Virus record (IMG/VR): IMGVR_UViG_3300027668_000008
Span: 124,001 to 188,000 of that record
Length of the DNA stretch: 64,000 nt
Direction: 5' to 3' (one strand)
In this document: in pieces, positions 3,985 through 26,865 of the stretch
How the letters are laid out: each line of letters begins with the position of its first letter
How positions within the stretch are numbered: position 1 is the stretch's first letter
The notes under the pieces: model-generated
Seen by the model: only the letters and a program-made list of their open reading frames with translations
Database searches by the model: none
What the model was told of the DNA's origin: nothing
Position numbers and translations under genes: made by a program

Positions 3985-4061
3985 TGGCGCACCCTACAGG
4001 ACTCGAACCTATTACCTCTGGTTCCGCAAACCAACGCTCTATCCAGATGAGCTAAGGGTGC
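3985..4061 (-). tRNA. tRNA-Arg, anticodon GCG
   Basis: GCACCCT/AGGGTGC acceptor stem, A20, anticodon arm TTGGT-TTGCGGA-ACCAG, TTCGAGT T-loop, encoded CCA. Confidence 0.9.
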
Positions 4062-4072
4062 CTTTATAGTTT

Positions 4073-4148
4073 TGGTGGAGGATACAGGGATCGAACCTGC
4101 TACCTCCTGAATGCAAATCAGGCGCTCTCCCAGATGAGCTAATCCCCC
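4073..4148 (-). tRNA. tRNA-Ala, anticodon TGC
   Basis: GGGGGAT/ATCCTCC stem with G3:U70, arm CCTGA-TTTGCAT-TCAGG, encoded CCA. Confidence 0.95.
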
Positions 4149-4181
4149 AAAACTAAATTCTTTTTGTAACATACTAATACT

Positions 4182-4210
4182 ATAATATAACATTCAACGA
4201 GTGTTGTCAA
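4182..4210 (-). promoter_or_regulatory. sigma70-type promoter for tRNA-Ala/tRNA-Arg
   Basis: TTGACA-N17-TATTAT. Confidence 0.75.
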
Positions 4211-4222
4211 GAGCCATAAAAG

Positions 4223-4312
4223 TGGCGGAGAGACTGGGATTTGAACCCAGGAAAGAGTTGCCCCTTTGCCGGTTTAGTAAACCGGTGCTTTCAACCGCTC
4301 AGCCATCTCTCC
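4223..4312 (-). tRNA. tRNA-Ser (long variable arm), anticodon ACT
   Basis: GGAGAGA/TCTCTCC stem, G73, long variable arm AAAG-GGGCAACT-CTTT, arm CCGGT-TTACTAA-ACCGG, encoded CCA. Confidence 0.88.
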
Positions 4313-4321
4313 GGAGTATTT

Positions 4322-4525
4322 TTATTTAGGTACGATTTCAAAACACTTAACTAGTGCCTGCATATCAGTCAAACCAGCCGCTTTACATTCTGCGTATAAT
4401 TTCTTTCTAGCGCCGACTACTTCGTCTGGTGCTACTTTTATACTTTGCATCCTATTTGATTTTGCATTAGGATTCATGCCACGATATCTGGTATTATGTT
4501 TATTATTTTTGTTACGATCATTCAC
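4322..4525 (-). CDS. Small basic hypothetical protein between tRNAs
   Basis: 67-aa ORF, GTG start. Confidence 0.55.
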   Translation of the reverse strand: MNDRNKNNKHNTRYRGMNPNAKSNRMQSIKVAPDEVVGARKKLYAECKAAGLTDMQALVKCFEIVPK

Positions 4526-4541
4526 GCAATTTATTTTTCTG

Positions 4542-4617
4542 TGGTGCCGCTTCCCGGATTCGAACTGGGCACCTACTGATTACAAATCAGTTGCTCTACC
4601 AAATGAGCTAAAGCGGC
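4542..4617 (-). tRNA. tRNA-Thr, anticodon TGT
   Basis: GCCGCTT/AAGCGGC stem, arm ACTGA-TTTGTAA-TCAGT, encoded CCA. Confidence 0.95.
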
Positions 4618-4920: not shown

Positions 4921-5817
4921 TTATGCTAGTTTGAACATTCCGCCAAAGATGTTATCAACAAATGTACTGTGGTCAATCTGCTCGTAACTTGTGCAGTTCT
5001 CGGGTAGAAACCCTCGATGCCACATATAAACAAAACTAGCAACTACACAGGCGTTAGCATAATGCCAACTGTTAAGTGTTCTTCGTCCAGGTATCAGTAA
5101 ATGACTGTGTTTTACTAAATCTTCTGTTTGATACTCTGAACTACTTGTAACCGTAGTATGGAACAATGTTTCTGTGTGCCAATCAACTTTACTAGCATCA
5201 ACGTTGTCGGTATCTGCTATCCAGTTTGTTTGTATGTCGATATTATCATCTCCTAGCCATGAATCAATTTCACTAGCGAAAAAATATTTATTTTGTAACT
5301 TAATAAGTTTAGGTTGCCCTAATACGTTATTCATTACTTCTTGGTAATCTTCTAATGACAATCCAGGTAAAGCATTTTCACCTGTTTCACTAGTTTTAGA
5401 AATTCCTGTAAAATGTTTGATAGACTTTACATTCTCGTTTACATTAACAATACGTTTAATCCACATATCCGTTGCCGCATATTGTAAATTAATATCATCT
5501 AAAATAATGTTATTGTGCGGTGCTACGTCATCTTGTAATGCAAATGTACAAAGTAACGGTATTCCGAATTCTGAACATAAGCCTACTATATTGTCATCTT
5601 CATAGTTTGGGTTTGTACAAACTACAATGTCAGCACCTCTGACAATATCATGCATTGTTAGTGTTGATGTAAATTTTCTAACATATGCTGGGTTCAAATA
5701 ATTATCACCAAAACAAGTAACTTGAATTTCATCATCGAACTGTACTGCATTAATTTCAAGTAATGTTTTTACGGCATATAAATTTTTGCCATCGCCTACT
5801 ATGTGTATATTAATCAT
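4921..5817 (-). CDS. Rossmann-fold protein, saccharopine dehydrogenase / homospermidine synthase-like (divergent)
   Basis: N-terminal IHIVGDG, DIVRGADIVVCT and CSEFGIPLL resemble the NAD(P)-binding domain of this family. Confidence 0.4.
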   Translation of the reverse strand: MINIHIVGDGKNLYAVKTLLEINAVQFDDEIQVTCFGDNYLNPAYVRKFTSTLTMHDIVRGADIVVCTNPNYEDDNIVGLCSEFGIPLLCTFALQDDVAPHNNIILDDINLQYAATDMWIKRIVNVNENVKSIKHFTGISKTSETGENALPGLSLEDYQEVMNNVLGQPKLIKLQNKYFFASEIDSWLGDDNIDIQTNWIADTDNVDASKVDWHTETLFHTTVTSSSEYQTEDLVKHSHLLIPGRRTLNSWHYANACVVASFVYMWHRGFLPENCTSYEQIDHSTFVDNIFGGMFKLA

Positions 5818-6121
5818 TGAACCTCTCCCTAACGTGTTGATAAAAAGTGTCTAATTCTCCACCAAACTGTCCGGTTAGATGGTCTACTGCTTGTAGGCAA
5901 TATTCTGTATTATTGTTGTTCAATTCAATTACAAAGTCTTCGTGCAACTTTGTCCAGTTTTCTAACTGTGGTAAACTGTCAAGGCTTAGTTTAGCAGTAT
6001 CTACAACTGCATATAGTGTAAGGTCTGTGTTCTTTTCTTTCACAGTAACCGTGTCTAGTTCAAGCACGGTGTACCTGTCTCTTAATGCTTCTGCTTGTTT
6101 TTTACCATATACTATGTGCAT
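5810..6121 (-). CDS. Stand-alone homologue of the adenylate cyclase C-terminal region
   Basis: MHIVYGKKQAEALRDRYTVLELDTVTVKEK aligns by eye with LTLLVGESSVSDEYTFIELDKIAVKGK of the cyclase at 9030-11063; the helical tail (LHEDF..ELDTFYQHVRER vs EHDKY..ELHNYYEVMSER) also aligns; ATG at 6121. Confidence 0.65.
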   Translation of the reverse strand: MHIVYGKKQAEALRDRYTVLELDTVTVKEKNTDLTLYAVVDTAKLSLDSLPQLENWTKLHEDFVIELNNNNTEYCLQAVDHLTGQFGGELDTFYQHVRERFND

Positions 6122-6201
6122 CTTTGCCTCTCTTGAATAACTTATTATACTAGTACTTATCTTCTTCAAAGATAGGTAAATAATAATGTAAGTTAAGTAT
6201 T

Positions 6202-6230
6202 ATAATAACAGAATTATGTTGTTATGTCAA
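6202..6230 (-). promoter_or_regulatory. sigma70-type promoter for the 6121-4696 operon
   Basis: TTGACA-N17-TATTAT. Confidence 0.7.
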
Positions 6231-6239
6231 GGAGAATGT

Positions 6240-6518
6240 ATGGATATTTTTAAACTCATAGCAGAACTAGGTTTCCCTATTGCAGGTGCTTTAGCGGCTG
6301 GCTTCTTTGTCTTTACAACAGTAAAATTTATACTTGCAAGTGTAACTAGTAGTATTCAAGGGCTAAAAGGTATTGTAGGCAGTTTAGACAACCGTGTACA
6401 AACAATGAATAACGACTTGGTTAAAATGGATTCATTAATAAGTTATGCATTTGGCGTTAAACCAAATGTAGACAGAATTGCCGCTAATGAAGGCAAAGAA
6501 GACGCAAGGAGAGACTAA
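6240..6518 (+). CDS. Small membrane protein with GFPI motif, paralogue 1 (one TM plus coiled coil)
   Basis: ATG 6240 with GGAGA RBS; LGFPIAGALAAGFFVF, then LDNRVQTMNNDL. Confidence 0.8.
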   Translation: MDIFKLIAELGFPIAGALAAGFFVFTTVKFILASVTSSIQGLKGIVGSLDNRVQTMNNDLVKMDSLISYAFGVKPNVDRIAANEGKEDARRD

Positions 6519-6802
6519 TGGCAGATATAGATATTAACCAAACAGTGGAAGCACCACCCGTTGATGATGGTTGCATTACTGAATGTTTTGGCGAAGCAGA
6601 CAGAGTTGGTGTAGAGTTCACTGACGCCGGTGTAGTTAAAAATATTACAATAGATGATAGTGTTTCCGGTATAGGTGATGTACAAGCAGGTATAGAATTT
6701 ATCTATAATATGCGAGAACATATGGTAGATATTAGTGTAGCCACAGTATATGCAATAACTGTGTATGCTCTTGTTTTATGGATTAAAAGGAAGTTAAGAT
6801 AG
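6518..6802 (+). CDS. Small acidic protein with C-terminal TM helix
   Basis: TAATG coupling; C-terminal hydrophobic helix followed by KRKLR. Confidence 0.75.
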   Translation: MADIDINQTVEAPPVDDGCITECFGEADRVGVEFTDAGVVKNITIDDSVSGIGDVQAGIEFIYNMREHMVDISVATVYAITVYALVLWIKRKLR

Positions 6803-6814
6803 TGATATTTAAAC

Positions 6815-7135
6815 ATGATAGTAACAGATTTAATTAGCGATTACGGATTTCCTATTGTTGCCGCGGTGGGCATGGGATATTTCGTATATTATATATGGAA
6901 ATGGGTAACTATTGAAGTTAAACCTTTAATTGGCGCAACTAGTGGAACACTTATAGGGTTAATTGACCGTATAAGAATGCTCGATAACGACATGATAAGA
7001 TTAACACAAAAGATTAACATGGTTATAGAGTTCAAAGAAGAATACGAAAAACTAACGGGGAAGAAACTCGCAATGACTGTCGATGACATCGAATCGATTA
7101 AGAAAGAGAACTTAAAGAATGCTAAAAAGAAATAA
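6815..7135 (+). CDS. Small membrane protein with GFPI motif, paralogue 2
   Basis: YGFPIVAAVGMGYFVYYIW, then LIDRIRMLDNDMIRL; clearly similar to 6240-6518. Confidence 0.8.
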   Translation: MIVTDLISDYGFPIVAAVGMGYFVYYIWKWVTIEVKPLIGATSGTLIGLIDRIRMLDNDMIRLTQKINMVIEFKEEYEKLTGKKLAMTVDDIESIKKENLKNAKKK

Positions 7136-7268
7136 CAACTGGCTTAATAGTCAAAATACTGCTACTAAAATATATTTAAAATCACAACCTATATGGCATG
7201 ATAAAGATATGCTTATCGTAATTACTGTTGCTTTATTGTCTGGATTTCTTGTAGGACTTGCAGTTTAA
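7119..7268 (+). CDS. 49-aa membrane protein (QPIWHD motif), not in the ORF track
   Basis: Manual translation MLKRNNNWLNSQNTATKIYLKSQPIWHDKDMLIVITVALLSGFLVGLAV; overlaps the end of 6815-7135. Confidence 0.65.
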   Translation: MLKRNNNWLNSQNTATKIYLKSQPIWHDKDMLIVITVALLSGFLVGLAV

Positions 7269-8241
7269 CAATTGGTAAGAATTTCCATTGTAATACGTTA
7301 TTATCTTTACAATAGTCTTCAAACCTATGTCTAATTGCAACAACATTATCTGCACCATATTTAATTCTAGTTGGCAAGTATGTAAAGATATTAGAACGCC
7401 ATATGCTAGAACCAGGCTTTATCCAGGAAAAATCTTCTATAATATCCTTATTAAGGAATTCAACTGGAATAGATTCAAACCAATCCCAAAAATCTTCTCT
7501 GTCTATACTATCAGGTAACTGATTTAATACCGTTTCTTTATTGGTATAAATTTCTTTGTAGTACTCGATACTGTGTTTGCTTATATCATAAAACACAACT
7601 GTGTCAGGTATTACGTTATTTTTATAATATTCAGTTAATGTTATAAATGGTTTGTTACCAGCACACAATAAGTAAAGTGTTTTATCATAAGAGTAAAATT
7701 TATCGTATTGTTCTTTGCTACAATCTTTGTACACAGGTTCTGTGTTTTCCACATATAACCTATCTAAGTCTAAATTATAGTTGTGTTCGGTTTCCCAATC
7801 ATCATCAGTTTTGACAAATGTATCCAATCCAACTTCTTTAGAAAACCATTTTATTGTTGTATTAACAGGAACATCTTGTACAAACGTATCAGATCCTGAC
7901 ACAAACCAATCATGATTTAATCGTATAACAAAACAAAAACTATTCATGTTTTTAAATGCAATAATATCCGGTTCATCTTTAATTGCTTCTTTTACAAAAT
8001 CTAACATTAATTCGTTACGCAAATATGTACCTTCTCGAACGATAAGTGCGTAATCTGCCTTGTTTCTGAGGTTAGTAAGAGTACTGTCTAATGTACCAGT
8101 AATTTTAAATATATCAATATGTTCGTTATCTGCTACAGTATTATCATCTCTGATCAATCCCATATCAAATATGTTTGACCAAGTTATGTTGTGTAAGTAC
8201 TCGTCACTTGTACAATTTAATGCTACTGCTACTAAATTCAT
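7222..8241 (-). CDS. Hypothetical protein
   Basis: 339-aa ORF coupled to the upstream hydroxylase. Confidence 0.7.
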   Translation of the reverse strand: MNLVAVALNCTSDEYLHNITWSNIFDMGLIRDDNTVADNEHIDIFKITGTLDSTLTNLRNKADYALIVREGTYLRNELMLDFVKEAIKDEPDIIAFKNMNSFCFVIRLNHDWFVSGSDTFVQDVPVNTTIKWFSKEVGLDTFVKTDDDWETEHNYNLDLDRLYVENTEPVYKDCSKEQYDKFYSYDKTLYLLCAGNKPFITLTEYYKNNVIPDTVVFYDISKHSIEYYKEIYTNKETVLNQLPDSIDREDFWDWFESIPVEFLNKDIIEDFSWIKPGSSIWRSNIFTYLPTRIKYGADNVVAIRHRFEDYCKDNNVLQWKFLPIVKLQVLQEIQTIKQQ

Positions 8242-8864
8242 ATCAACTTCCTGTAGTTTTCATAAGCCTGTTTCTTAAACTCTGTAGTTTTGCCACCATG
8301 TAAAATAATATGATATCTATGTTCATTGCTATTATTACGAACACTGTGCTTGTTACTTAAATCTAACCATGCACCTTTATTTTGTTTAAATGGTACAACT
8401 CCGACATCCTCCATAACAAATTCACATCCTTCTGGATTGTTAATTGCAATGTTGATAGGACCTAATCTACTTTTATCATAATCTCTATGTGATTCAATAT
8501 AACCACCGGGTGCTACAGACATAATTCTAATTCTATCAAAGTCTATAAAATAATTTTGTTCTAACAACCATTGTTTAAGTGAAGGTATACTGTTACTTGC
8601 GTTAGTCCAATCAAAGACTGCATCTTCTTCTTGTATATCATAAAACATTGGAGCATTAGTGAATTCATCACCTTGCCCGTGCATAACTAATGATGACCAA
8701 CCTTTTGATTGGTCTTCTCTGTGATTATAAAAGTTATCTTGTGCTTGTGATATTTCTTGTAAAATATTTTCTACAGGCATATTGACATCGAACATTAAAT
8801 AAGGTAACTTACTATCTGTTCTTAATTCAATTGGATTTTTACATTCTTTGTTAAAACTTAACAT
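8238..8864 (-). CDS. Aspartyl/asparaginyl beta-hydroxylase-like 2OG-Fe(II) oxygenase
   Basis: IRIMSVAPGGYIESHRDY (HxD) and HSVRNNSNEHRYHIILHG; likely start ATG 8864 (ORF extends to 8927). Confidence 0.8.
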   Translation of the reverse strand: MLSFNKECKNPIELRTDSKLPYLMFDVNMPVENILQEISQAQDNFYNHREDQSKGWSSLVMHGQGDEFTNAPMFYDIQEEDAVFDWTNASNSIPSLKQWLLEQNYFIDFDRIRIMSVAPGGYIESHRDYDKSRLGPINIAINNPEGCEFVMEDVGVVPFKQNKGAWLDLSNKHSVRNNSNEHRYHIILHGGKTTEFKKQAYENYRKLI

Positions 8865-8883
8865 TTGTCGATTGTCTTTTCTT

Positions 8884-9021
8884 TTATTCTTGTTCGCCGT
8901 TTGCTTTACTTTTTGCGTAGGCGGCATCTGCTCTCATTTGTGTTGCTATTCGCAGTTGCATATAATCTCTTAAAGGTGGCTTAGTCTTTGGTTTATCTTT
9001 TCGTGCAGAACCCAGACTCAA
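8884..9021 (-). CDS. Possible 45-aa basic peptide (TTG start)
   Basis: Manual translation MSLGSARKDKPKTKPPLRDYMQLRIATQMRADAAYAKSKANGEQE fills the intergenic gap. Confidence 0.35.
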   Translation of the reverse strand: MSLGSARKDKPKTKPPLRDYMQLRIATQMRADAAYAKSKANGEQE

Positions 9022-9029
9022 CGAATCTT

Positions 9030-11063
9030 TTATTTGCTTGTTGCGATGAATACTCCGTCCCATTGTTTTGTACCTTTTCTTTTTAGCTCATGGGCCCGTT
9101 CAGACATTACTTCATAGTAATTATGAAGCTCTTCAGGGCATACACTTTGTAATTTGGAAATTTGATTAATCGCTAGATCCCACTTGGAATCTCTATATAA
9201 CTGCAAATATTTATCATGTTCCTTGACGTAATTAACTGCACACTCACTAAACAAAGCAGTATAAATGGTAGCCGGTACTGTCTTGCCCTTAACTGCTATT
9301 TTATCTAGTTCTATGAATGTGTATTCGTCGGATACTGAACTTTCACCAACTAACAATGTTAAACCGTACTCTTTACTTTGCCCCTCTAGTCTTGCCGCTA
9401 AATTAACACAATCACCCAAAACTGAGTAGTCAAAACGTTGATTAGACCCCATATTACCTACCACAGCACTACCTGTGTTAATACCAACACCAATTTTAAT
9501 AGGCATTAATCCTTCGGATTCTAATTCTTTATTAAGTTTTCTTAATGCAACAAACATCTCATCAGCAGTTTTAATTGCTAATTCACGTTGTTTAGGAACA
9601 TCTAAAGGTGCGTTCCAAAATGCCATAAGTGCATCACCAATATACTTGTCTACTGTGCCTTCGTTTTTCATAACAATATCTGTCATAGGTGTCATGTACC
9701 TATTAATTAAAGAAGTTAACCCTTGTGGATTTGTTTTGTATTGTTCACTAATAGGAGTAAATCCTCTAATGTCACTAAACAATAAAGTTAACTCTCTTGT
9801 ATCGCCACCTAACTTTAATAGTTCTGGATTTTGTTGTAATTTCTTAACCATAGCAGGTGCTAGATAGTGCTCAAACTGTTTTTTAATTTGTTGTTTTAAA
9901 CTAAACTCTTTTACAAATCTATTAAACACTGCATGAAAGCCTGTAAGTACAAATACTATTAATGGCATTGTTACATCGAGCAAATACAAATAGTGTTGCC
10001 ATGCATACAATGAACCATATACTAATCCTGCACTAACACTTAATATCGTAAGTCCAACAATATAATATGGTAATCTAACACTTATTAAAATAATAAGGAG
10101 ACCTAACGTAACAGAAGTTAGTAATTCAACTAGCACGGCCCAATACGGGCGTTGTATCTGGTCTCCGTCGATAACTGTTTGTAGTGTTACTGCCGAAGGT
10201 ATATAATTATATTTAGGACCAGTAGGTGTAGCAATTACTCCACCGATGCCTTCTGCTGTCGAACCTATAATAACTGTTTTGCCTGCGAATAAAGAAAAGT
10301 CGTCACTACTTGCACTAATTGTTTCAAACTCTTTATTCCAACGTAACCATATTTGTCCATTGGGATCTGTACTAATAATTGGATATCCCGGAACACGAAT
10401 TTTATCTATTCCGCCTTGGTTTGCTTTAATTTGATAACTTGGTTTACCTGTACTAACTCTAATAACTTCGATTGCTATTGATGGGTATGTGTTAGTGCCT
10501 ACTCTCATAATTAAAGGAACACGTCTTACAACACCATCTATCTCATTAGGTGTATTTAGAACACCAACGCCGTCTGCATTTAAGCCTAGTAACGGAATAG
10601 GTCCTAACATACCGGGCCATTCGAACAAATAAGGTACTGCATCACCTATTGTTGCAACTCCTCTTGTTACCGCATTTTTATTTACTTTTAAACTTCCTAC
10701 TTGTGCAATAACAATCCCATTGCCGGCTATCGATTCAACAAATGCTTGGTCACCGCCTAATCTATCATCTTCACTAAACAGTATAGGTATTACAATTACA
10801 CCTGCTCCTGCTTCACGCAACTTCCAAATAAGTTCTGCTAGAACATCACGTTTCCAGGGCCACTGTCCGTATTTTTCAATAGATGCTTCATCTATTGTTA
10901 CAATACCAATGTCGTTGGATACAACCGGAGTATCGGTTTGTTGTAGTAAATCAAACTGTTTAAGTCTCAATATTTCAACTATACTACTATTGCCGTAATG
11001 GAAGAAGGTTAGAACTGCCAATGTTACAAAGGCAGTTAACCAATGCGTTAAATATTTTTTCAT
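9030..11063 (-). CDS. CHASE2-domain class III adenylate cyclase
   Basis: N-terminal TM; CHASE2 motifs IDEASIEKYGQWPWKR and DGVVRRVPL; three TMs; catalytic LFSDIRGFT, DKYIGDALMAF, VGNMGS, DYSVLGDCVNLAARLEG, IAVKGK. Confidence 0.95.
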   Translation of the reverse strand: MKKYLTHWLTAFVTLAVLTFFHYGNSSIVEILRLKQFDLLQQTDTPVVSNDIGIVTIDEASIEKYGQWPWKRDVLAELIWKLREAGAGVIVIPILFSEDDRLGGDQAFVESIAGNGIVIAQVGSLKVNKNAVTRGVATIGDAVPYLFEWPGMLGPIPLLGLNADGVGVLNTPNEIDGVVRRVPLIMRVGTNTYPSIAIEVIRVSTGKPSYQIKANQGGIDKIRVPGYPIISTDPNGQIWLRWNKEFETISASSDDFSLFAGKTVIIGSTAEGIGGVIATPTGPKYNYIPSAVTLQTVIDGDQIQRPYWAVLVELLTSVTLGLLIILISVRLPYYIVGLTILSVSAGLVYGSLYAWQHYLYLLDVTMPLIVFVLTGFHAVFNRFVKEFSLKQQIKKQFEHYLAPAMVKKLQQNPELLKLGGDTRELTLLFSDIRGFTPISEQYKTNPQGLTSLINRYMTPMTDIVMKNEGTVDKYIGDALMAFWNAPLDVPKQRELAIKTADEMFVALRKLNKELESEGLMPIKIGVGINTGSAVVGNMGSNQRFDYSVLGDCVNLAARLEGQSKEYGLTLLVGESSVSDEYTFIELDKIAVKGKTVPATIYTALFSECAVNYVKEHDKYLQLYRDSKWDLAINQISKLQSVCPEELHNYYEVMSERAHELKRKGTKQWDGVFIATSK

Positions 11064-11068
11064 ACTAG

Positions 11069-11074
11069 TATTTA
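11069..11074 (-). promoter_or_regulatory. TAAATA late-type promoter box directly upstream of the cyclase
   Basis: TAAATA 6 nt before the ATG; the same box recurs before many genes. Confidence 0.6.
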
Positions 11075-11094
11075 TTTAAAGGAAATTTGGGGTG

Positions 11095-12549
11095 CTAATC
11101 TGATTGTGTAAAGGTCGTTGTTCCACAACCAGCGGCATTAGTGCAACTTTGTGTTAAACTATATGTCTTATCTGAACTACCATCTTGGTGTAAATCCAAT
11201 GTACTTGAATACCCAGACATATTAATTGTTGCGGCATGGTCGCCTGATCCATCTTGGTCAACTGAAACAGTTTGGTTACTTCCAACTGTAATGTCTTGAA
11301 AGTGTGTTCCTGTTCCGGCTTGGTCTAAATCTAATGTGTTAGAACTTCCGTTAATATCCACAAACATCATTTTATCGCCATCGTCATTTTGTTGTAAATT
11401 TATATTGTTACTATTTCCTGCAATGTCGACATCCATAAAATGACCCAAGTTACCAACGGCTCCGTCTTCTTCTTGAGTGAAAGTTCCTGTATTACTATTA
11501 CCAACTACATTTAATCTTAAATCATGGTCACCATCATCATCGATATTGTCACCTTGTCGTATTGTCATAGTGTTACTATTTCCGTTAATATCTAGCAAAA
11601 CAGTATTGCCATCACTAAATGATCCTGAGTTATTACCCTGTGTAATTGATAGTGTATTATCGTCGCCAGTTATTTCTGCGTTGTCGATACTGCTGGAAGT
11701 TGTTCCTAAACCTGCAACTAAATTATCATTGTCGTATTGTATAATGTCTATGTTTGCATTATTACCACTTTGTGTAATATAAATTCCGTTGCCACTGTGT
11801 GTTATTCCTCTTGTAGTTGATCTTAAATTAGTTTGTGCAGTTGTAGGTTCTGAAGTATATGATGCTGGACTGAATACGCCTTCCTCTTCAAGTGTTTCTC
11901 CTAAAAAGACATACATTCTTGCTGAACGAGTTGTGTTAGCATTATTAAATTGTGCCTGGTCTAAAGTGATAATTAATTTACCACCATTACTACCATAACC
12001 ATATACTGCCCAAGATTTCCAGCCACTAAGGCCTGATGCTGTATTTGACGCTATCGCCGTACCACCCGATTGCATTGAAAAAAGATTTCTTGTTACCCAT
12101 GAATTTGAAACGGTATATTGAGAACCATTAGCGTGAGAAGTATAGTTTGCCTCACCATTGTATATTGAGATAGCACCTACACTTAATTTACTTTCAACAA
12201 GCGATTCAATGCTCAGCGTTCTAGCGCCATCATGGTCACCATTACCAGCAATTAAAACTGTGCCACCTGCACTAATGTAAGTTTCATATGCTGTCTTACA
12301 GGTACCACCACAACTGTTATTACCTGCTATGTTAATGTGTAAATCTTTACCAGTAAAATCACTTAAAGTAACTGAACCACTATTTGTGCCTGTAACTGTA
12401 AACCCATGACCCTCTAACTCACCTTTTACTTTATTGTACATATTGGTATCAGTATAGTTTATATGAGCTGTTTCGGCAAATGCTTGTATAGGTAATACTA
12501 ATAATAAACTAATTAGACTGATTAATAGTGATCTGATTAACACCGGCAT
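11095..12549 (-). CDS. Large secreted protein: N-terminal globular domain plus C-terminal curlin-like repeats
   Basis: Signal peptide; repeats of type I-x-G-x-x-N-x-x-x-I-x-Q (ITGDDNTLSITQ, INGNSNTMTIRQ, VVGNSNTGTFTQ, IAGNSNNINLQQ, INGSSNTLDLDQ). Confidence 0.8.
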   Translation of the reverse strand: MPVLIRSLLISLISLLLVLPIQAFAETAHINYTDTNMYNKVKGELEGHGFTVTGTNSGSVTLSDFTGKDLHINIAGNNSCGGTCKTAYETYISAGGTVLIAGNGDHDGARTLSIESLVESKLSVGAISIYNGEANYTSHANGSQYTVSNSWVTRNLFSMQSGGTAIASNTASGLSGWKSWAVYGYGSNGGKLIITLDQAQFNNANTTRSARMYVFLGETLEEEGVFSPASYTSEPTTAQTNLRSTTRGITHSGNGIYITQSGNNANIDIIQYDNDNLVAGLGTTSSSIDNAEITGDDNTLSITQGNNSGSFSDGNTVLLDINGNSNTMTIRQGDNIDDDGDHDLRLNVVGNSNTGTFTQEEDGAVGNLGHFMDVDIAGNSNNINLQQNDDGDKMMFVDINGSSNTLDLDQAGTGTHFQDITVGSNQTVSVDQDGSGDHAATINMSGYSSTLDLHQDGSSDKTYSLTQSCTNAAGCGTTTFTQSD

Positions 12550-13600
12550 CTCCTAACTGTACATTATCTACACCAACAAAATTCTGCTTTAATGTTATGT
12601 TATAACTGTAATCTCTATCTAATCGTAGTTCCATAAAATTACCTGCACTATCTTCTTTAATAATAAGGTAACTAGGATCGTTTGTAAATGTTATTCCTGT
12701 TGTTTCGTCGAATCCAATTTTAAAACCATTCCTAGGATCAAATGCTTGTTTAAGTTTTTTGCTTAATTCTGCATTTAATACGACTAGTAAGTCTTGTAAA
12801 AAATCTTGTAATAAGAAGTCAATGTCTAATTCGTTTGCAAGTTCCTCATTTGATTCTTCTAATAAATCTTCATCTAAATCGTTAAATTCTAAAAAGTCAA
12901 TATCTAATGCACTTGATACATCTGATAGTTGCTCTGCTAGTTCTATTGCTTCTTGTAAATCCTTGGGCTTTTGTACGATTAACAAGTTGTTAATCATATT
13001 AGCATCTAAATCCAGTATAATAGGTTTTAAAGGTTTAGATTCAAATGTTGTAACTACTGTTGTTTGAAATGCTTGATTCATTATAACAAATCCTGCATCT
13101 GTTTCAACTTCAATTTCTCCTACATAACAGTTGCCGTTGCTATCGCAACTCGGTAGTAAAATTATAAGACTGCTTCCAATCTCATCTACTGTCATCGTGA
13201 AGTCAGTGCCTCTTACTCCAATGACTGCCGTAGGTGTTTTGATCTTTACATTTTGTTTAAACTTTTTTCCTATTTGCCCACTTGCATACCTAACTGTGCC
13301 TAAACTGGCTTTGATAGATAGTGATCCAATATCATTTGCAGGGTCATAGACAAATTCATCGATTATTACATTACTGTGTGGCGTAATTTCTAATTTAGTA
13401 TCGTCTATAAATTCTATATTTTGTTTATGCTTAAATGTTTCTATTCGGTCCATAGAGAATATATCAGAATCCACATCACCTTGTTCAGTTGTGTCTTCTC
13501 TATAAATCTTACTTGGTCCGTCCGATTTAGTAATTTTACCTATACTGGCAAATCCACTAGTCGGAAGAAAGCAGATTAGTATAACACAGAGCCACTTCAT
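12509..13600 (-). CDS. Secreted FecR-domain protein
   Basis: Signal peptide; FIDDTKLEITPHSNVIIDEF, GTVRYASG, IKTPTAVIGVRGTDF. Confidence 0.85.
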   Translation of the reverse strand: MKWLCVILICFLPTSGFASIGKITKSDGPSKIYREDTTEQGDVDSDIFSMDRIETFKHKQNIEFIDDTKLEITPHSNVIIDEFVYDPANDIGSLSIKASLGTVRYASGQIGKKFKQNVKIKTPTAVIGVRGTDFTMTVDEIGSSLIILLPSCDSNGNCYVGEIEVETDAGFVIMNQAFQTTVVTTFESKPLKPIILDLDANMINNLLIVQKPKDLQEAIELAEQLSDVSSALDIDFLEFNDLDEDLLEESNEELANELDIDFLLQDFLQDLLVVLNAELSKKLKQAFDPRNGFKIGFDETTGITFTNDPSYLIIKEDSAGNFMELRLDRDYSYNITLKQNFVGVDNVQLGDAGVNQITINQSN

Positions 13601-14292
13601 TAGTCGCTCTGCGTAATGTCTATGTCAGAATTGGTGCCAACTGTTGTTAATTGTATTTTGTTGTCATAAATTCCACTTTGTGTAATGTCCACTGTAGTAC
13701 CTTCACCTGTATGATTATGTGTTAAACTATGTCCTGCACTATCTCCTGCGCCTGACATTATATAGTTCGCCGTGTTATCTACTGAACTGCCTAATGCATC
13801 ATTATCCATATCGATGTCTGCATCTGCGTTCGCGGCATTTACTGTTAGTGTGATAGTATCTTCGTTGCTAGTTGCTAAATCTATTGTTCCTACAAAGTTA
13901 GCCGATGATGCACTGGCTCCAATAGCAACTGTTACTGTTGCGTCATCGCCGACTACATCTATGCTCATACTTACTGTTTCACAATTAGAACTTGCACAAG
14001 TTAAAGCAACTGTGTTAGAGTTACCTGTTAAATCTATATTACCTGTGTAAGTAGTACCGTTAATAACTGTAGACACAACGTTACTGTTACCAACTTGATC
14101 AATATTAAATGTCATGCTGTTACCAGTTAAGGATATCGCTGTACTGCTGTTACCTGCCACGTTGTTCTGTCCGTCCTGTGTTATATCCAAGTTTAAATTA
14201 TTACCACTTTGTGTAATATAGATATCATTAGCATACACCGAACTTATAGAACAAACCAGAAACAAGAGCACATAAACTATTTTATTTGTCAT
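13600..14292 (-). CDS. Secreted curlin-like repeat protein
   Basis: Signal peptide then NDIYITQSGNNLNLDITQDGQNN; Gly/Asn/Gln beta-solenoid repeats. Confidence 0.8.
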   Translation of the reverse strand: MTNKIVYVLLFLVCSISSVYANDIYITQSGNNLNLDITQDGQNNVAGNSSTAISLTGNSMTFNIDQVGNSNVVSTVINGTTYTGNIDLTGNSNTVALTCASSNCETVSMSIDVVGDDATVTVAIGASASSANFVGTIDLATSNEDTITLTVNAANADADIDMDNDALGSSVDNTANYIMSGAGDSAGHSLTHNHTGEGTTVDITQSGIYDNKIQLTTVGTNSDIDITQSD

Positions 14293-15355
14293 TTATTTTC
14301 TCCGTCTGTTTCTGCCCTTTTAGTTTAGTTAACGTTTCCCATAGATACATATCAGCAGTGTTTTTAAAACAGTTGCCTCCTGCATTGCAAACGTTAAAGT
14401 CATCTCCCGGTGCTCCTTTTAGCATTTCACTTTCGTGCATAGTTGGGATTGAGTTAATGTCCGGTTTAGAAATAGGCACAGATTTTAATTTAGAACTTTG
14501 GAGAGTCGTATTTTTATCATCTGTATTAATTACTTCACCGGACTTATGGATTAACTTCGTAGTTTTTTGTGTCGTTTTCTTAAACTTCCACAAGCCCTTG
14601 ATTTCGCCTTCTTTGACGATCTCGACAATAGCCTGCTCAATAGCAAGTCTAACTGCCTGATTGGTAGGTTCATTAACTGCTGAACCTATCTCAATTTCTA
14701 ATGCTCTTGTACCTAAATCTAAAAATCTAAATACATCTGAGCTATCTTTATAACTTGCAATAGTCTTATCAACTGCAACCGACAGTAGTATTTCACCAGT
14801 TGATACACTAATAATTCTCATTGCCACAGATACTCTATCTGTTCTGTATTCTTTTGATGCTCCAATACCAAAGTATCTTGCACCTACACCGCCACTTTCA
14901 ATGTTGCTATCGTAACCTATAATAGCACCATCTAATAATAGTCCAGCAAATAACATAGGTTGTAATGCTAGTGCATCTTTACCTTCAAAATTTTCTCTTG
15001 TGCTTCTTATTAATTGTCTTTCTTTTACCAACGAGTCTAAACTAACACGTTCTAATACCTTAAACCATTTACCGCCTCCGGCTTGTTGCAATGCACGAAT
15101 CACATGACTCTCTGCACCTTGCGTTACTGCGGTACTTAATTGACTAAAATTTGTTGAAGGTTTACGTTGTCCTGTTTTATCTCCAAAGCCGTATAGTGCT
15201 ATGGTAATAATAGGTCCGTCGATTGGTGGTAAGTTTAGAAGTGCATTAACCCCTATTGGTATCGAAGCAGGTGGGTCGTATCTGACTTGCTTTACAGGGT
15301 TACCTGCACAAGCACCTAGTAACAATATGATGGATAATGCTACAAATATCCTCAT
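14282..15355 (-). CDS. csgG: Curli secretion channel CsgG (lipoprotein) with C-terminal extension
   Basis: Lipobox LLLGAC; FGDKTGQRKP, STAVTQGA, WFKVLERVSLDSLVKERQLIR, GAIIGYDSN, GVGARYFGIGA, GEILLSV. Confidence 0.95.
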   Translation of the reverse strand: MRIFVALSIILLLGACAGNPVKQVRYDPPASIPIGVNALLNLPPIDGPIITIALYGFGDKTGQRKPSTNFSQLSTAVTQGAESHVIRALQQAGGGKWFKVLERVSLDSLVKERQLIRSTRENFEGKDALALQPMLFAGLLLDGAIIGYDSNIESGGVGARYFGIGASKEYRTDRVSVAMRIISVSTGEILLSVAVDKTIASYKDSSDVFRFLDLGTRALEIEIGSAVNEPTNQAVRLAIEQAIVEIVKEGEIKGLWKFKKTTQKTTKLIHKSGEVINTDDKNTTLQSSKLKSVPISKPDINSIPTMHESEMLKGAPGDDFNVCNAGGNCFKNTADMYLWETLTKLKGQKQTEKINDK

Positions 15356-15358
15356 CCA

Positions 15359-15808
15359 TTAAAACCCGAAGCCACTTAATGGCACCACTAGTTCACTAAA
15401 TGAACCATCGGCTTCAGTTATCTGTACAGTAATTGTACTCGAAGATGTATCTTTAATCCAGTATATAGTTGCACCTTCGACAGTTGCAGTACCACTATTG
15501 GCACCAGTGTCAGAAAACATACTATCAACTAAATTTTTGGATAAGTTTGCGTAAATTCTTGATTCAACGTTTGCTAAGAATTTTGAAAGAGTTTCTTGGG
15601 CGGCATCTCTAACTGCTTGTCTTTCAGCCGCTTCTTTGGCTTTCTTTATTTCAGCCGCACGTTGGAATTGGAGTTGCTCTATACTTAAGACGTGTGTACT
15701 ATAACCTTTTCCACTAAAGGAAGGATTTTTAAATTCATGTGTTAAGTCGCTGGCGTATGCAGGCGTCATAACGAACATAGTCAAGGCTATAGTGATAAAA
15801 AATTTCAT
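15359..15808 (-). CDS. csgF: Curli assembly component CsgF
   Basis: Signal peptide then SDLTHEFKNPSFSG; ITVQITEADGSFSELVVP; directly upstream of csgG. Confidence 0.88.
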   Translation of the reverse strand: MKFFITIALTMFVMTPAYASDLTHEFKNPSFSGKGYSTHVLSIEQLQFQRAAEIKKAKEAAERQAVRDAAQETLSKFLANVESRIYANLSKNLVDSMFSDTGANSGTATVEGATIYWIKDTSSSTITVQITEADGSFSELVVPLSGFGF

Positions 15809-15828: not shown

Positions 15829-15836
15829 TATTTATA
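15829..15836 (-). promoter_or_regulatory. TATAAATA late promoter of the csgF-csgG operon
   Basis: Exact T4 late consensus about 20 nt upstream of csgF. Confidence 0.7.
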
Positions 15837-26340: not shown

Positions 26341-26479
26341 AAAATTACTTGGTACTTTTTATATATCTGTATATAGTTCGTCACGTTCACTGAAACGTGT
26401 GCAATTAGAAAGTGTATTTCCATGTTACCAGTGTATGCTTGTAACAATCCTTTGTCACTAATGTTTCTAACTTTGGTAT

Positions 26480-26745: not shown

Positions 26746-26749
26746 AGTA

Positions 26750-26780
26750 TATTTATACACTATTCACTTGACTTTGTCAA
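26750..26780 (-). promoter_or_regulatory. Hybrid sigma70 / late promoter of tmRNA
   Basis: TTGACA-N17-TATAAA, where the -10 is part of TATAAATA. Confidence 0.8.
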
Positions 26781-26865
26781 CCAAATAATATACAAATAAA
26801 GTACTAATATTAAAAATAAAAGATAAGTATTCTATAAAAGCAAAATACATCAACTAAAGGTAATT

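What the first reader, a model, noticed from the sequence alone, without database searches (positions are those of the whole stretch)
5810..15808. Candidate phage trans-envelope signalling system: curli pore, curlins, FecR and a CHASE2 adenylate cyclase
One co-oriented, mostly overlapping gene run encodes CsgF, CsgG, curlin-like A, a FecR protein, curlin-like B and an intact cyclase. Nearby are four small membrane proteins and an orphan cyclase tail. In bacteria, CHASE2 cyclases are often linked to FecR proteins and an outer-membrane receptor (e.g. the Sinorhizobium CyaD1/CyaD2/CyaK circuit). Here the outer-membrane element would be a type VIII secretion pore. csgF/csgG in marine myophages has been reported (recalled, not checked), mostly discussed as structural or amyloid. 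Inference: the infected cell builds a surface sensor whose occupancy is relayed through FecR to CHASE2 and cAMP, for example sensing superinfection or cell contact and setting lysis timing or exclusion.
Basis: partly seen in the sequence, partly recalled or inferred. Interest (0 to 1): 0.92.

Follow-up and report, generated by a model that had tools for sequence, protein, structure and literature searches.

The report
Phage curli pore plus cAMP sensor
This is a new copy of a published marine-phage gene set, a curli secretion pore and fibre proteins joined to a membrane sensor that makes cyclic AMP; its function is still unknown, and the proposed surface-to-cAMP relay is plausible but untested.

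Summary
On the minus strand lie CsgF, CsgG, a curlin-repeat protein, a secreted FecR-domain protein, a second curlin-repeat protein and a CHASE2 class III cyclase with its catalytic residues in place. Nearby are two paralogous single-pass membrane proteins and a small ORF homologous to the cyclase C-terminus.

The set is not new. It is the "viral type VIII secretion module" of pelagiphages, annotated in HTVC008M and Melnitz. Wittmers et al. 2022 (PMC9599517) described it with FecR and the cyclase. Co-occurrence is near-absolute in my sample (34/34 and 26/27 loci).

Four points appear new:
- The closest cellular relatives of the phage FecR and cyclase are themselves an adjacent FecR/CHASE2-cyclase gene pair in Alphaproteobacteria, so the module looks like a curli system fused to that sensor pair.
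- The phage FecR protein ends in a curlin-type strand that three cellular partners lack.
- The small "histidine kinase" genes show no kinase features.
- In a divergent sublineage those small genes are replaced by a cNMP-binding membrane protein.

The trans-envelope signalling reading is partly supported. Interactions, stimulus and output are inferred. FecR also occurs without the cyclase in some phages.

The parts
15829..15836 (-). T4-type late-promoter-like motif TATAAATA, 21 nt upstream of the csgF start codon and followed by a GGAG ribosome-binding site. A hairpin closes the upstream gene.
   Evidence: The motif, or ATAAATA, lies within 80 nt upstream of csgF in 28/55 loci and of the first small gene in 30/58. 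It is found upstream of csgG, curA and fecR in 0-1 loci each. This is suggestive only, because the intergenic DNA is AT-rich.
15359..15808 (-). CsgF, the secreted cap/adaptor of the curli channel, with an N-terminal signal peptide.
   Evidence: Pfam PF10614 E=2.9e-14; phrog_35372 E=7e-48; N-terminus.
14282..15355 (-). CsgG, the outer-membrane lipoprotein secretion channel. It has a lipobox with Cys16. The core domain ends near residue 257, followed by a variable ~100-aa C-terminal extension.
   Evidence: Pfam PF03783 E=1.3e-49; NCBIfam CsgG 7.6e-56; CsgG lengths range from 263 to 397 aa across loci.
13600..14292 (-). Curlin-repeat protein A (~230 aa, conserved length). It has a signal peptide and ends in a curlin-type strand (...DIDITQSD).
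   Evidence: Curlin_rpt 18.6 bits, below the cut-off; repeat motif; solved curlins 8c50 and 8enq are two of the three weak profile matches, 8c50 the best; C-terminal motif in 51/57 homologues.
12509..13600 (-). Secreted FecR-domain protein. From the N-terminus it has a signal peptide, a FecR beta-sandwich (about residues 20-195), an acidic helical linker and a C-terminal beta region ending in a curlin-type strand (...ITINQSN). It has no anti-sigma domain and no membrane span.
   Evidence: Pfam PF04773 E=1.3e-7; alignment A1; model pLDDT 80-90 for residues 20-195; Foldseek matches to the periplasmic domains of FecR/PupR-type regulators 4m0n and 6ovk (E=4e-4 to 1.3e-3); C-terminal motif in 44/59 homologues and 0/3 cellular partners.
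11095..12549 (-). Curlin-repeat protein B. It has a signal peptide, a variable N-terminal alpha/beta domain (about residues 25-230) and roughly ten curlin-type repeats.
   Evidence: In the model, the repeat region forms a strand-turn-strand solenoid with pLDDT mostly 60-90. The N-terminal domain is modelled at lower confidence, and its best, non-significant fold matches are ThuA-like and flavodoxin-like proteins. Length ranges from 264 to 644 aa across loci.
9030..11063 (-). Receptor-type class III nucleotide cyclase. It has an N-terminal membrane span, a periplasmic CHASE2 domain, three membrane spans (309-376), a cytoplasmic catalytic domain and a ~75-aa C-terminal helical tail.
   Evidence: Pfam CHASE2 9e-42 and Guanylate_cyc 2.6e-19; topology; best solved relatives are bacterial adenylate cyclases. 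D431, K473, D477 and R558 are invariant in 87 phage homologues. The specificity position is S, D or T (the adenylate-cyclase type). N554 is Asn in 54 and Ser in 33.
6216..6518 (+). Small single-pass membrane protein, type A (conserved 'GFPI' span plus a coiled-coil-like helix). The probable true start is 6240.
   Evidence: phrog_18771 E=1e-28. It flanks the module, together with its paralogue, in 37/39 complete loci. No kinase or other Pfam/NCBIfam domain was found. Start codon.
6815..7135 (+). Small single-pass membrane protein, type B, a paralogue of type A.
   Evidence: BLASTP against type A E=5e-13; phrog_18771 E=1.5e-30. An 18-residue match of its N-terminus to a holin PHROG has E=1.8e-5. 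Among deposited phage genomes the family is found only in HTVC008M and the Melnitz isolates.
5810..6169 (-). Stand-alone ORF homologous to the last strands and C-terminal helical tail of the cyclase. It runs divergently from small gene A.
   Evidence: BLASTP against cyclase residues 563-656, E=4e-7. Stand-alone copies sit in the same position in L032 and L044.

Best explanation
**What it is (near-certain).** This is the window's copy of the conserved pelagiphage 'viral type VIII secretion' module. It is best read as two cellular units joined together. The first is an alphaproteobacterial-type curli system: the CsgG channel, the CsgF cap and two curlin-repeat proteins. The second is the FecR-domain/CHASE2-cyclase sensor pair that is also adjacent in Alphaproteobacteria. 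Two paralogous single-pass membrane proteins accompany them.

**How it most likely works (inferred).**

1. Probably late in infection, the Sec-exported proteins build a CsgG/CsgF channel in the host outer membrane and export or display the curlin-repeat proteins.
2. The secreted FecR-domain protein is tied to that apparatus by its own curlin-type C-terminal strand. Its FecR domain acts as the extracytoplasmic partner of the CHASE2 domain.
3. The state of the curli apparatus or the envelope thereby sets the activity of the inner-membrane cyclase. This is outside-in signalling that produces a cyclic nucleotide, most probably cAMP.
4. The nucleotide is read at the membrane. In this phage the receptor is unknown. 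The two small membrane proteins are candidates for partners of the cyclase.

**Shown:** gene content, order, conservation, export and topology signals, intact catalytic residues, and FecR/CHASE2-cyclase adjacency in bacteria.

**Inferred:** every protein contact, the direction of signalling, the stimulus, the nucleotide made and the physiological output.
For: - **Identity and conservation.** 34/34 and 26/27 loci carry the full set. At least 589 viral contigs carry csgG relatives and at least 591 carry cyclase relatives. The FecR profile retrieved at least 8000 database proteins. PMC9599517 reports the same module.
- **Sensor-pair origin.** The best cellular cyclase matches are alphaproteobacterial CHASE2 cyclases at about 29-35% identity. 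A FecR-domain gene lies next to them in at least 15/22 records, in the same order (FecR then cyclase) in Ruegeria and Shinella. Published FecR/CHASE2 neighbourhoods: PMC5192318 and PMC5498481. Published outer-membrane-protein to CHASE2-cyclase signalling: PMC13001267.
- **Envelope topology.** There are signal peptides on CsgF, both curlins and FecR, a lipobox on CsgG, and a 1+3 membrane-span arrangement around CHASE2.
- **FecR fold.** It matches the periplasmic domain that binds an outer-membrane transducer in FecR/PupR systems.
- **Curlin-type C-terminal end.** It is present on FecR in 44/59 sequences, on CurA in 51/57 and on CurB in 53/54. It is present in 0-1 of the other module proteins, about 1% of background ORFs and 0/3 cellular FecR partners.
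- **Cyclase competence.** The metal-binding Asp residues, Lys and Arg are invariant in 87 sequences, and the specificity residue is S, T or D.
- **A nucleotide receptor attached to the module.** A cNMP_binding protein (Pfam 2e-21 and 3e-18) with C-terminal hydrophobic segments is encoded divergently from csgF in 4 of the 6 viral contigs that carry it. In the two of these four with enough flanking sequence to judge (L008, L012), the small-protein pair is absent.
- **Timing.** There is a late-promoter-like motif at the head of the csgF unit.
Against: - There is no direct evidence for any interaction.
- FecR co-varies with the curli proteins rather than consistently with CHASE2. The distance-matrix correlation between FecR and CHASE2 is 0.86 in one gene-order class but 0.51 in the other.
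- FecR persists without the cyclase in L153 and in some podophages (PMC9599517).
- In S. meliloti the FecR-domain neighbour of cyaD1 was not needed for signal perception (PMC5498481).
- No cNMP-binding protein is encoded in this window or in the other loci held.
- Whether SAR11 or OM43 hosts have a cAMP receptor was not determined.
- The curlin assignment is below Pfam's threshold.
- The C-terminal half of the FecR model is low-confidence.
- Melnitz cultures showed no clumping (PMC9004378), so it is unproven that fibres are made at all.
Confidence: 0.45

Rival explanations
1. This is a fibre-making module with inside-out regulation, the published reading. The phage makes real curli fibres that aggregate host cells ('sibling capture') or shield the infected cell from other phages. 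FecR and the cyclase merely regulate expression or assembly of the secretion system.
For: - All parts needed for curli export apart from CsgE are present.
- PMC7029224 and PMC9599517 propose this.
- FecR stays with the curli genes even without the cyclase.
- FecR co-varies with CsgF/CsgG/CurA.
Against: - CHASE2 is an extracytoplasmic input domain, so the cyclase is built to receive a signal from outside the cytoplasm.
- The FecR protein is secreted and has no anti-sigma or DNA-binding part, so it cannot regulate transcription directly.
- No transcription factor is encoded in the module.
- No clumping was seen in Melnitz cultures (PMC9004378).
Confidence: 0.2
2. This is a lysis-timing or membrane-permeabilising device. 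Cyclic nucleotide from the cyclase triggers small phage membrane proteins (the paralogous pair, or the cNMP-binding membrane protein in the sublineage). Alternatively the CsgG/F pore itself opens, to depolarise the envelope and set the moment of lysis. This would be analogous in logic to T4 lysis inhibition or to Pycsar effectors.
For: - The cNMP-binding + membrane-segment gene is attached to the module in four contigs; in the two with enough flanking sequence to judge, the small pair is missing.
- The small proteins co-vary with the cyclase rather than with their neighbour csgF in the gene order where they lie at the opposite end of the operon (r=0.77-0.91 against 0.48-0.55, n=12).
- One small protein has a weak N-terminal match to a holin PHROG.
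- There is a late-promoter-like motif.
- PMC9004378 argues for a lysis role.
Against: - The holin match covers 18 residues only.
- The small proteins have no nucleotide-binding domain and no detectable homology to the cNMP protein.
- The co-variation may reflect ancestral adjacency and two deep clades rather than function.
- An outer-membrane pore cannot depolarise the inner membrane.
- This rival concerns the output. It is compatible with the best explanation rather than exclusive of it.
Confidence: 0.15
3. This is an uptake pore with iron sensing. An ungated CsgG channel lets nutrients or cofactors into the periplasm, and FecR senses iron citrate as in the Fec system.
For: - No CsgE gate was found among the module's proteins.
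- The idea is raised in PMC7029224 and PMC9599517.
- A TonB/ExbBD cluster lies beside the Ruegeria FecR/cyclase pair.
Against: - The phage FecR lacks the cytoplasmic anti-sigma domain and the membrane span that define FecR-type regulators.
- No ECF sigma factor or TonB-dependent transducer is in the module.
- CsgF and two conserved curlin-repeat proteins would be superfluous for a simple pore.
Confidence: 0.05
4. The proteins are virion components, and the neighbouring cyclase is an unrelated auxiliary gene.
For: - In HTVC008M and Melnitz the module lies next to tail and baseplate genes.
- Late-promoter-like motif.
Against: - Sec signal peptides and a lipoprotein signal direct the products out of the cytoplasm, where T4-like virions assemble.
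- The same module occurs in podophages (PMC9599517).
- The cyclase co-occurs almost without exception.
Confidence: 0.03

Closest known systems
Pelagiphage viral type VIII secretion (curli) module (HTVC008M, Melnitz; Zaragoza-Solas 2020 PMC7029224; Buchholz 2022 PMC9004378; Wittmers 2022 PMC9599517)
   Same: The genes and their order are the same: CsgF, CsgG, curlin, FecR, curlin, cyclase, plus one or two small flanking genes. The setting is a T4-like marine phage. Amino-acid identity to the isolates is about 50%.
   Different: - There is no nucleotide-level match to any deposited phage.
- The small genes lie downstream of the cyclase on the opposite strand, with two extra genes in between.
- CsgG has a ~100-aa tail.
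- A stand-alone cyclase-tail ORF is present.
- The published 'histidine kinase' label for the small genes is not supported here.
Sinorhizobium meliloti NsrA / CyaD1-CyaD2-CyaK / Clr circuit
   Same: Both have CHASE2-domain class III cyclases of the same architecture. They are among the closest cellular relatives found, at about 31-32% identity (the best, Ensifer and Shinella, reach 34-35%). A FecR-domain gene lies beside the cyclase. In S. meliloti an outer-membrane protein is required for signal input (PMC13001267, PMC5498481).
   Different: - The outer-membrane element there is a beta-barrel, NsrA, not a CsgG secretion channel.
- There are no curlins.
- The output goes through the CRP-type regulator Clr, which has no counterpart in this window.
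- The FecR-domain neighbour was not required for perception.
Burkholderia 'BiofilmReg' operon (response regulator, LysM-FecR protein, CHASE2 histidine kinase, DUF4136)
   Same: A secreted FecR-domain protein is encoded immediately beside a CHASE2 sensor (PMC5192318).
   Different: The output is a histidine kinase rather than a cyclase. The FecR protein carries LysM rather than a curlin-type end. There is no secretion system.
Bacterial curli system (CsgBAC/CsgDEFG)
   Same: Both have the CsgG lipoprotein channel and CsgF, and secreted Gln/Asn/Gly-rich repeat proteins predicted to form a beta-solenoid.
   Different: No CsgE, CsgC/CsgH or CsgD was detected among the module's proteins. The curlin repeats fall below the Pfam threshold. 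One curlin carries an extra N-terminal globular domain. A FecR-domain protein carries a curlin-type end.
FecA-FecR-FecI / PupB-PupR cell-surface signalling
   Same: The fold of the extracytoplasmic FecR domain is shared (Foldseek 4m0n and 6ovk). The logic is also shared: a periplasmic FecR domain reads an outer-membrane protein.
   Different: There is no anti-sigma domain, no membrane span, no ECF sigma factor and no TonB-dependent transducer. The downstream partner would be a CHASE2 cyclase.
Pycsar (cyclase plus cNMP-binding effector) anti-phage systems
   Same: Both combine a class III-type cyclase with a cNMP-binding effector; in the L008/L012/L187/L194 sublineage that protein also has membrane segments. 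Both proteins match PADLOC Pycsar models at the domain level.
   Different: - The matches reflect shared domains only.
- The phage cyclase has the Lys + Ser/Thr/Asp signature of adenylate cyclases and an extracytoplasmic CHASE2 input.
- The system is phage-encoded.
- This window has no cNMP-binding gene.

Membership tests
Pelagiphage viral T8SS module | Adjacent csgF and csgG in a marine phage genome | tested here: met
   Homologous to HTVC008M and Melnitz genes at 50-60% identity.
Pelagiphage viral T8SS module | Gene order of curlin-repeat gene, FecR gene, second curlin-repeat gene, then adenylate cyclase downstream of csgG | tested here: met
   The same order is seen in 34/34 testable loci.
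Pelagiphage viral T8SS module | One or two small flanking genes, published as 'histidine kinase' | tested here: met
   Homologous small genes are present. No HisKA/HATPase or any other kinase signal was found, and at 92-106 aa they are too short for one. The genes are there; the name is not supported.
Bacterial curli (type VIII) secretion system | CsgG outer-membrane lipoprotein and CsgF | tested here: met
   Pfam and NCBIfam; lipobox.
Bacterial curli (type VIII) secretion system | Secreted curlin subunits with Curlin_rpt repeats | tested here: inconclusive
   The scores are below Pfam's gathering cut-off. The repeat motif, signal peptides, curlins as two of the three weak PDB matches (including the best) and the predicted solenoid all agree with a curlin. 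Foldseek did not return curlins.
Bacterial curli (type VIII) secretion system | Accessory CsgE gate, CsgC/CsgH inhibitor and CsgD regulator | tested here: not met
   No such Pfam or NCBIfam family was found among the module's proteins. The rest of the phage genome was not searched.
Bacterial curli (type VIII) secretion system | Production of extracellular amyloid fibres | not testable with these tools
   This needs microscopy or dye binding. Melnitz cultures showed no clumping (PMC9004378).
FecR-type anti-sigma regulator (cell-surface signalling) | N-terminal cytoplasmic anti-sigma domain and a membrane span ahead of the periplasmic FecR domain | tested here: not met
   A cleavable-looking signal peptide is followed directly by the FecR domain. 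There is no other hydrophobic span.
FecR-type anti-sigma regulator (cell-surface signalling) | Partner ECF sigma factor and TonB-dependent transducer in the locus | tested here: not met
   None was found among the module's genes.
FecR-type anti-sigma regulator (cell-surface signalling) | Periplasmic FecR-domain fold | tested here: met
   Pfam PF04773. The confident part of the model matches 4m0n and 6ovk.
FecR-domain / CHASE2 sensor pair | Sensor with a CHASE2 domain between membrane spans and a cytoplasmic output domain | tested here: met
FecR-domain / CHASE2 sensor pair | Secreted FecR-domain protein encoded beside the sensor | tested here: met
   In the phage the two are separated only by curlin B. 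In Ruegeria, Shinella and S. meliloti they are directly adjacent.
FecR-domain / CHASE2 sensor pair | Physical or functional coupling of the FecR domain to CHASE2 | not testable with these tools
   No complex prediction or assay was available. Distance-matrix co-variation was inconsistent (r=0.86 and 0.51).
Class III adenylate cyclase | Two metal-binding Asp, substrate Lys, transition-state Asn and Arg, and an adenine-type specificity residue | tested here: met
   The window protein has D431, D477, K473, N554, R558 and S547. D, D, K and R are invariant in 87 homologues. The residue roles come from established knowledge of the family.
Class III adenylate cyclase | cAMP synthesis | not testable with these tools
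   This needs an enzyme assay.
Pycsar-like cyclase/effector pair | cNMP-binding effector encoded with the cyclase | tested here: not met
   None was found in this window. It is met only in the L008/L012/L187/L194 sublineage.
Holin (for the small membrane proteins) | Significant similarity to a holin family over most of its length | tested here: inconclusive
   There is an 18-residue N-terminal match to phrog_4898 (E=1.8e-5). There is no Pfam holin match.

The most novel reading that the evidence does not exclude
The phage equips the infected cell with its own trans-envelope sensor. A curli channel displays curlin fibres tipped or plugged by a curlin-ended FecR-domain protein. Changes at the surface or in the channel, for example contact, a second phage or envelope damage, are passed through FecR to the CHASE2 cyclase. 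The resulting cAMP acts on phage membrane effectors (the small paralogous pair, or the cNMP-binding membrane protein in a sister lineage) to time lysis or exclude superinfection.
Probability: 0.2. Interest if true: 0.85.

Novelty: new member of a known kind. Interest (0 to 1): 0.5.

Why it matters
The module is among the most abundant auxiliary gene sets of marine phages. I found at least 589 viral contigs with csgG relatives, at least 591 with cyclase relatives, and at least 8000 FecR-type proteins. Wittmers et al. report about 0.1% of assembled viral proteins in GOV2. Its hosts, SAR11 and OM43, lack curli genes, and three papers call its function unknown.

Reading the set as a curli system fused to a FecR/CHASE2-cyclase sensor gives a concrete model that can be tested in E. 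coli. Finding a cNMP-binding membrane protein attached to the module in a sister lineage points to where the signal goes.

If the model holds, it would be a phage-encoded envelope-to-second-messenger pathway. It would also be the first functional handle on the widespread but unexplained FecR/CHASE2 pairing in bacteria.

Tried and rejected
1. **Nucleotide search against deposited phages.** No match. Only protein-level relatives exist.
2. **Search of 185,579 species genomes with the FecR profile for a cellular source of the whole cassette.** The only full matches were six contigs from five metagenome bins assigned to unrelated taxa. They carry the phage-type arrangement including the small genes, so I read them as mis-binned phage DNA. 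No bacterial csgG + FecR + CHASE2 locus was found. The patterns used were narrow, so this is weak negative evidence.
3. **Large protein database search with the FecR profile.** It was swamped by phage-family members and gave no cellular context.
4. **Sequence search of solved structures with the FecR profile.** Nothing useful; the fold search was needed.
5. **Fold search with the curlin B model.** No curlin hits. The N-terminal domain gave only weak ThuA/flavodoxin-like matches.
6. **'Histidine kinase' identity of the small genes.** Rejected.
7. **Homology between the small proteins and the cNMP-binding membrane protein.** None.
8. **Distance-matrix co-variation as a test of FecR-CHASE2 coupling.** Ambiguous. 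It separates a curli+FecR block from a cyclase+small-protein block, but it is confounded by gene order, deep clades and recombination.
9. **Search for a cNMP-binding protein in the window and in the 190-odd loci held at that point.** Found only in L008 and L012 then, and later in four more contigs.
10. **'Iron-dependent regulator' reading of FecR.** Rejected on architecture.
11. **Pycsar membership.** Not claimed, because only domain-level similarity was found.

Full report
**1. What is in the sequence**

Between 9030 and 15808, six co-oriented minus-strand genes abut or overlap.

- **CsgF** (15359-15808): Pfam E=2.9e-14.
- **CsgG** (14282-15355): E=1.3e-49.
- **Curlin-like A** (13600-14292): a 230-aa repeat protein.
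- **FecR-domain protein** (12509-13600): E=1.3e-7.
- **Curlin-like B** (11095-12549): a 484-aa repeat protein.
- **Cyclase** (9030-11063): 677 aa, with CHASE2 (9e-42) and a class III cyclase domain (2.6e-19).

The export and topology signals fit an envelope-spanning set. CsgF, both repeat proteins and the FecR protein begin with signal-peptide-like sequences. CsgG has a lipobox. In the cyclase, one membrane span precedes CHASE2 and three follow it.

The repeat proteins score just under Pfam's Curlin_rpt cut-off. Other evidence still points to curlins. They carry a periodic G-N-S-N...I-x-Q motif with invariant Gln, Asn and Gly columns. Solved curlins are two of the three weak matches, including the best, in a profile search of solved structures (E=0.28 and 0.55, not significant on their own). 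The repeat region of curlin B is predicted to be a strand-turn-strand solenoid.

The plus strand carries four small ORFs. Only two of them, 6216-6518 and 6815-7135, are conserved. They are paralogues (E=5e-13) of one PHROG of unknown function. Each has a conserved 'GFPI' membrane span followed by a coiled-coil-like helix.

The ORF at 5810-6169 matches residues 563-656 of the cyclase (E=4e-7).

The window is a T4-like phage. It has ribonucleotide reductase, UvsX, gp32 and a DnaB-like helicase. It comes from a 306,714-bp IMG/VR contig.

**2. It is a known module**

Protein searches of deposited phages find the same six genes, in the same order, in Pelagibacter phage HTVC008M and the Methylophilales phage Melnitz isolates. 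Identity is about 50%. There is no nucleotide-level match.

The literature has covered the set in three steps:

- Zaragoza-Solas et al. (PMC7029224) reported the 'curli operon' of pelagimyophages and called its function a mystery.
- Buchholz et al. (PMC9004378) proposed a pore involved in lysis timing.
- Wittmers et al. (PMC9599517) described the full module. They list one or two 'histidine kinases', CsgF, CsgG, CsgA/B, FecR, a second CsgA/B and an adenylate cyclase. They found it in both podo- and myophages, with alphaproteobacterial affinities and global abundance.

None of the three papers mentions CHASE2, and the first two mention neither FecR nor the cyclase. None proposes a relay from the surface to the cyclase, and Wittmers et al. 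report neither signal peptides nor membrane spans.

**3. Co-occurrence**

- At least 591 viral contigs carry a cyclase relative. All 34 cyclase-seeded loci with at least 6 kb upstream carry CsgF, CsgG, curlin A and FecR in order.
- At least 589 viral contigs carry a csgG relative. Of 27 CsgG-profile-seeded loci with at least 7.5 kb downstream, all 27 have FecR and 26 have the cyclase.
- The exception, L153, has CsgF-CsgG-curlin-FecR but neither the cyclase nor the small pair.
- The small paralogous pair flanks the module in 37 of 39 complete loci. It sits either upstream of csgF, or downstream of the cyclase on the other strand, or between the cyclase and csgF in a rearranged order.
- Among deposited phage genomes, the small-protein family is found only in the six records that carry the module.

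**4. Where the FecR and cyclase genes come from**

In the plasmid/chromid collection, the best cellular matches to the cyclase are alphaproteobacterial CHASE2 cyclases at about 29-35% identity (Ensifer, Shinella, Sinorhizobium, Rhizobium, Paracoccus, Ruegeria). The matches to the phage FecR protein fall within a few kilobases of those cyclase matches in at least 15 of 22 records.

- In Ruegeria and Shinella, a FecR-domain gene lies immediately upstream of the cyclase on the same strand. Both cyclases have CHASE2 plus the cyclase domain.
- In S. meliloti, the two genes are convergent neighbours.

Published work agrees on the pairing:

- A LysM-FecR protein is encoded beside a CHASE2 histidine kinase in Burkholderia (PMC5192318).
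- SMc02177 is a FecR-domain protein studied alongside the CHASE2 cyclases of S. meliloti (PMC5498481).
- The CHASE2 cyclases CyaD1, CyaD2 and CyaK raise cAMP when a plant protein is sensed through the outer-membrane barrel NsrA (PMC13001267).

The phage module is best described as a curli system joined to a pre-existing FecR/CHASE2-cyclase pair, with curlin B inserted between the two.

I found no bacterial locus that also contains csgG. The only 'genome' hits with the whole cassette have the phage arrangement and sit in bins of unrelated taxa, so I read them as mis-binned phage contigs.

**5. The FecR protein**

It is not an anti-sigma factor. A signal peptide is followed directly by the FecR domain, and there is no cytoplasmic domain or membrane span.

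The model is confident for residues 20-195 only (pLDDT 80-90). That part matches the periplasmic domains of FecR/PupR-type regulators, including the PupR domain solved in complex with its outer-membrane transducer (4m0n, 6ovk; E=4e-4 to 1.3e-3).

Its C-terminus is a curlin-type strand. A terminal hydrophobic-x-hydrophobic-x-Gln-x(1-2) motif was counted across proteins:

| Protein set | With the motif |
|---|---|
| FecR homologues (distinct sequences) | 44/59 |
| Curlin A | 51/57 |
| Curlin B | 53/54 |
| Every other module protein | 0 or 1 each |
| Unrelated ORFs | about 1% |
| Cellular FecR partners examined | 0/3 |

This is the strongest sequence-level hint that the FecR protein is physically tied to the curli apparatus. 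It could be a substrate, a fibre cap or a dock. Which of these applies is inference.

**6. The cyclase**

Its nearest solved relatives are bacterial class III adenylate cyclases. The two metal-binding Asp residues, the substrate Lys and the Arg are invariant in 87 phage homologues. The specificity position is Ser, Thr or Asp, the adenylate-cyclase signature from established knowledge of the family. The Asn position is Asn in 54 and Ser in 33.

Two length classes exist, about 610 aa and about 680 aa. The longer class carries the helical tail that the ORF at 5810-6169 resembles.

**7. A nucleotide receptor attached to the module in a sister lineage**

The two complete loci without the small pair, L008 and L012, encode a 215-220-aa protein with a cNMP-binding domain (Pfam 3e-18 and 2e-21) and one or two C-terminal hydrophobic segments. 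The gene runs divergently from csgF, next to it.

A pattern search found this gene in six viral contigs. In four of them it abuts csgF. Both this protein and the cyclase match PADLOC's Pycsar models, but only at the level of the shared domains.

No cNMP-binding protein is encoded in the present window or in the other loci. This suggests the cyclic nucleotide is read at the membrane by a phage protein in at least one lineage. For this phage the receptor remains unknown.

**8. The small proteins**

They are 92-106 aa long and have no kinase domain. Pfam, NCBIfam and a profile search of solved structures give only coiled-coil noise. One of them has an 18-residue match to a holin PHROG.

In pairwise-distance comparisons over 35 modules, the curli proteins and FecR form one co-varying block, and the cyclase catalytic domain and the small proteins form another.

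In the gene order where the small genes sit beside csgF and furthest from the cyclase (n=12), their distances still track the cyclase (r=0.77-0.91) rather than CsgF (0.48-0.55). This is compatible with a functional link between the small proteins and the cyclase. It could also reflect ancestral adjacency and two deep clades, so I treat it as a lead.

The same analysis gave no consistent signal for FecR-CHASE2 coupling (r=0.86 in one gene order, 0.51 in the other).

**9. Timing**

A TATAAATA motif lies 21 nt upstream of the csgF start codon, followed by GGAG, and a hairpin closes the upstream gene.

Across loci, the motif or its 7-mer lies upstream of csgF in 28/55 and of the first small gene in 30/58. 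It is essentially absent ahead of the internal genes. This fits T4-type late transcription, but the intergenic DNA is AT-rich and the motif is not enriched in the window overall.

**10. Verdict**

The object is a new member of a published phage module.

Four things support it: co-occurrence, the bacterial precedent, the envelope topology and an apparently competent cyclase. Two new observations fit it: the curlin-type end on FecR and the cNMP-binding membrane gene in a sister lineage.

Against a strict relay stand three points. FecR persists without the cyclase. The S. meliloti FecR-domain neighbour is dispensable for perception. There is no evidence for any protein contact.

My best account, at about 0.45, is that the extracytoplasmic FecR/CHASE2 pair couples the state of a phage-built curli apparatus to cAMP synthesis late in infection. 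Fibre-making with inside-out regulation, and a lysis-timing output, are the main alternatives. The second of these is compatible with the best account.

Noticed in passing
window 26442-26799 (-): A two-piece (permuted) alphaproteobacterial-type tmRNA with tag peptide ANNNYQPEMALAA, like the one described for Melnitz. A TATAAATA motif lies at 26750-26757.
   Followed up: no
window 3985-4617 (-): A cluster of four tRNA genes: Arg-gcg, Ala-tgc, Ser-act and Thr-tgt.
   Followed up: no
whole window; contig IMGVR_UViG_3300027668_000008: The source contig is 306,714 bp, about twice the size of HTVC008M or Melnitz (141-147 kb). It may be a much larger relative, a concatemer or a chimeric assembly.
   Followed up: no
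window 8238-8927 (-) and 7222-8241 (-): An Asp/Asn beta-hydroxylase-domain protein and a 339-aa protein of unknown family lie between the cyclase and the small genes. Neither is next to the module in the other loci: the 339-aa gene is seen only in the window's own contig, and the hydroxylase has one weak match in L020 about 8 kb downstream of that cyclase. The curlins are very rich in Asn and Asp, so a hydroxylase next to them is worth a look, but the gene is reported as core to pelagimyophages in general.
   Followed up: partly
L012 8660-9322 (-), L008 4370-5017 (-), L187 10001-10636 (+), L194 1860-2474 (+): A cNMP-binding protein with C-terminal hydrophobic segments is encoded divergently from csgF. 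L008 and L012 lack the small membrane-protein pair; L187 and L194 hold too little sequence to judge. Two further contigs (L188, L193) carry the gene without a detectable module nearby.
   Followed up: yes
L153 8435-11474: A module variant with CsgF, CsgG, curlin and FecR but no cyclase and no small pair. The genes that follow are large and look structural, so this may be the podophage type.
   Followed up: partly
window 12509-13600 (-); model m4de2c4d246ad: A 61-column stretch of the FecR model superposes at 1.1 A rmsd and 26% identity on PDB 5ix9, described as a 'cell surface anchoring domain' (E=0.037, not significant). This may be relevant if the FecR protein is lodged at an outer-membrane pore.
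   Followed up: no
window 14282-14590 (-), i.e. CsgG residues ~258-357: This is a C-terminal extension of CsgG with no family match, shared with L004. CsgG length ranges from 263 to 397 aa among module-bearing phages.
   Followed up: no
L096-L101 (genome contigs): Six contigs from five metagenome-assembled 'genomes' carry the complete phage-type module. The bins are labelled Flavobacteriaceae, Pelagibacter, Pirellulales, Legionellales and Rhodobacteraceae. They are most likely phage contigs binned with cellular genomes.
   Followed up: partly
L106 4395-7376 (Ruegeria plasmid): A TonB/ExbB/ExbD cluster lies immediately beside, and divergent from, the bacterial FecR/CHASE2-cyclase pair.
   Followed up: no
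window 17189-19041 (-): Dehydrogenase and nucleotide-sugar epimerase genes lie just upstream of the module. This fits the cell-surface-modifying variable region described for pelagimyophages.
   Followed up: no
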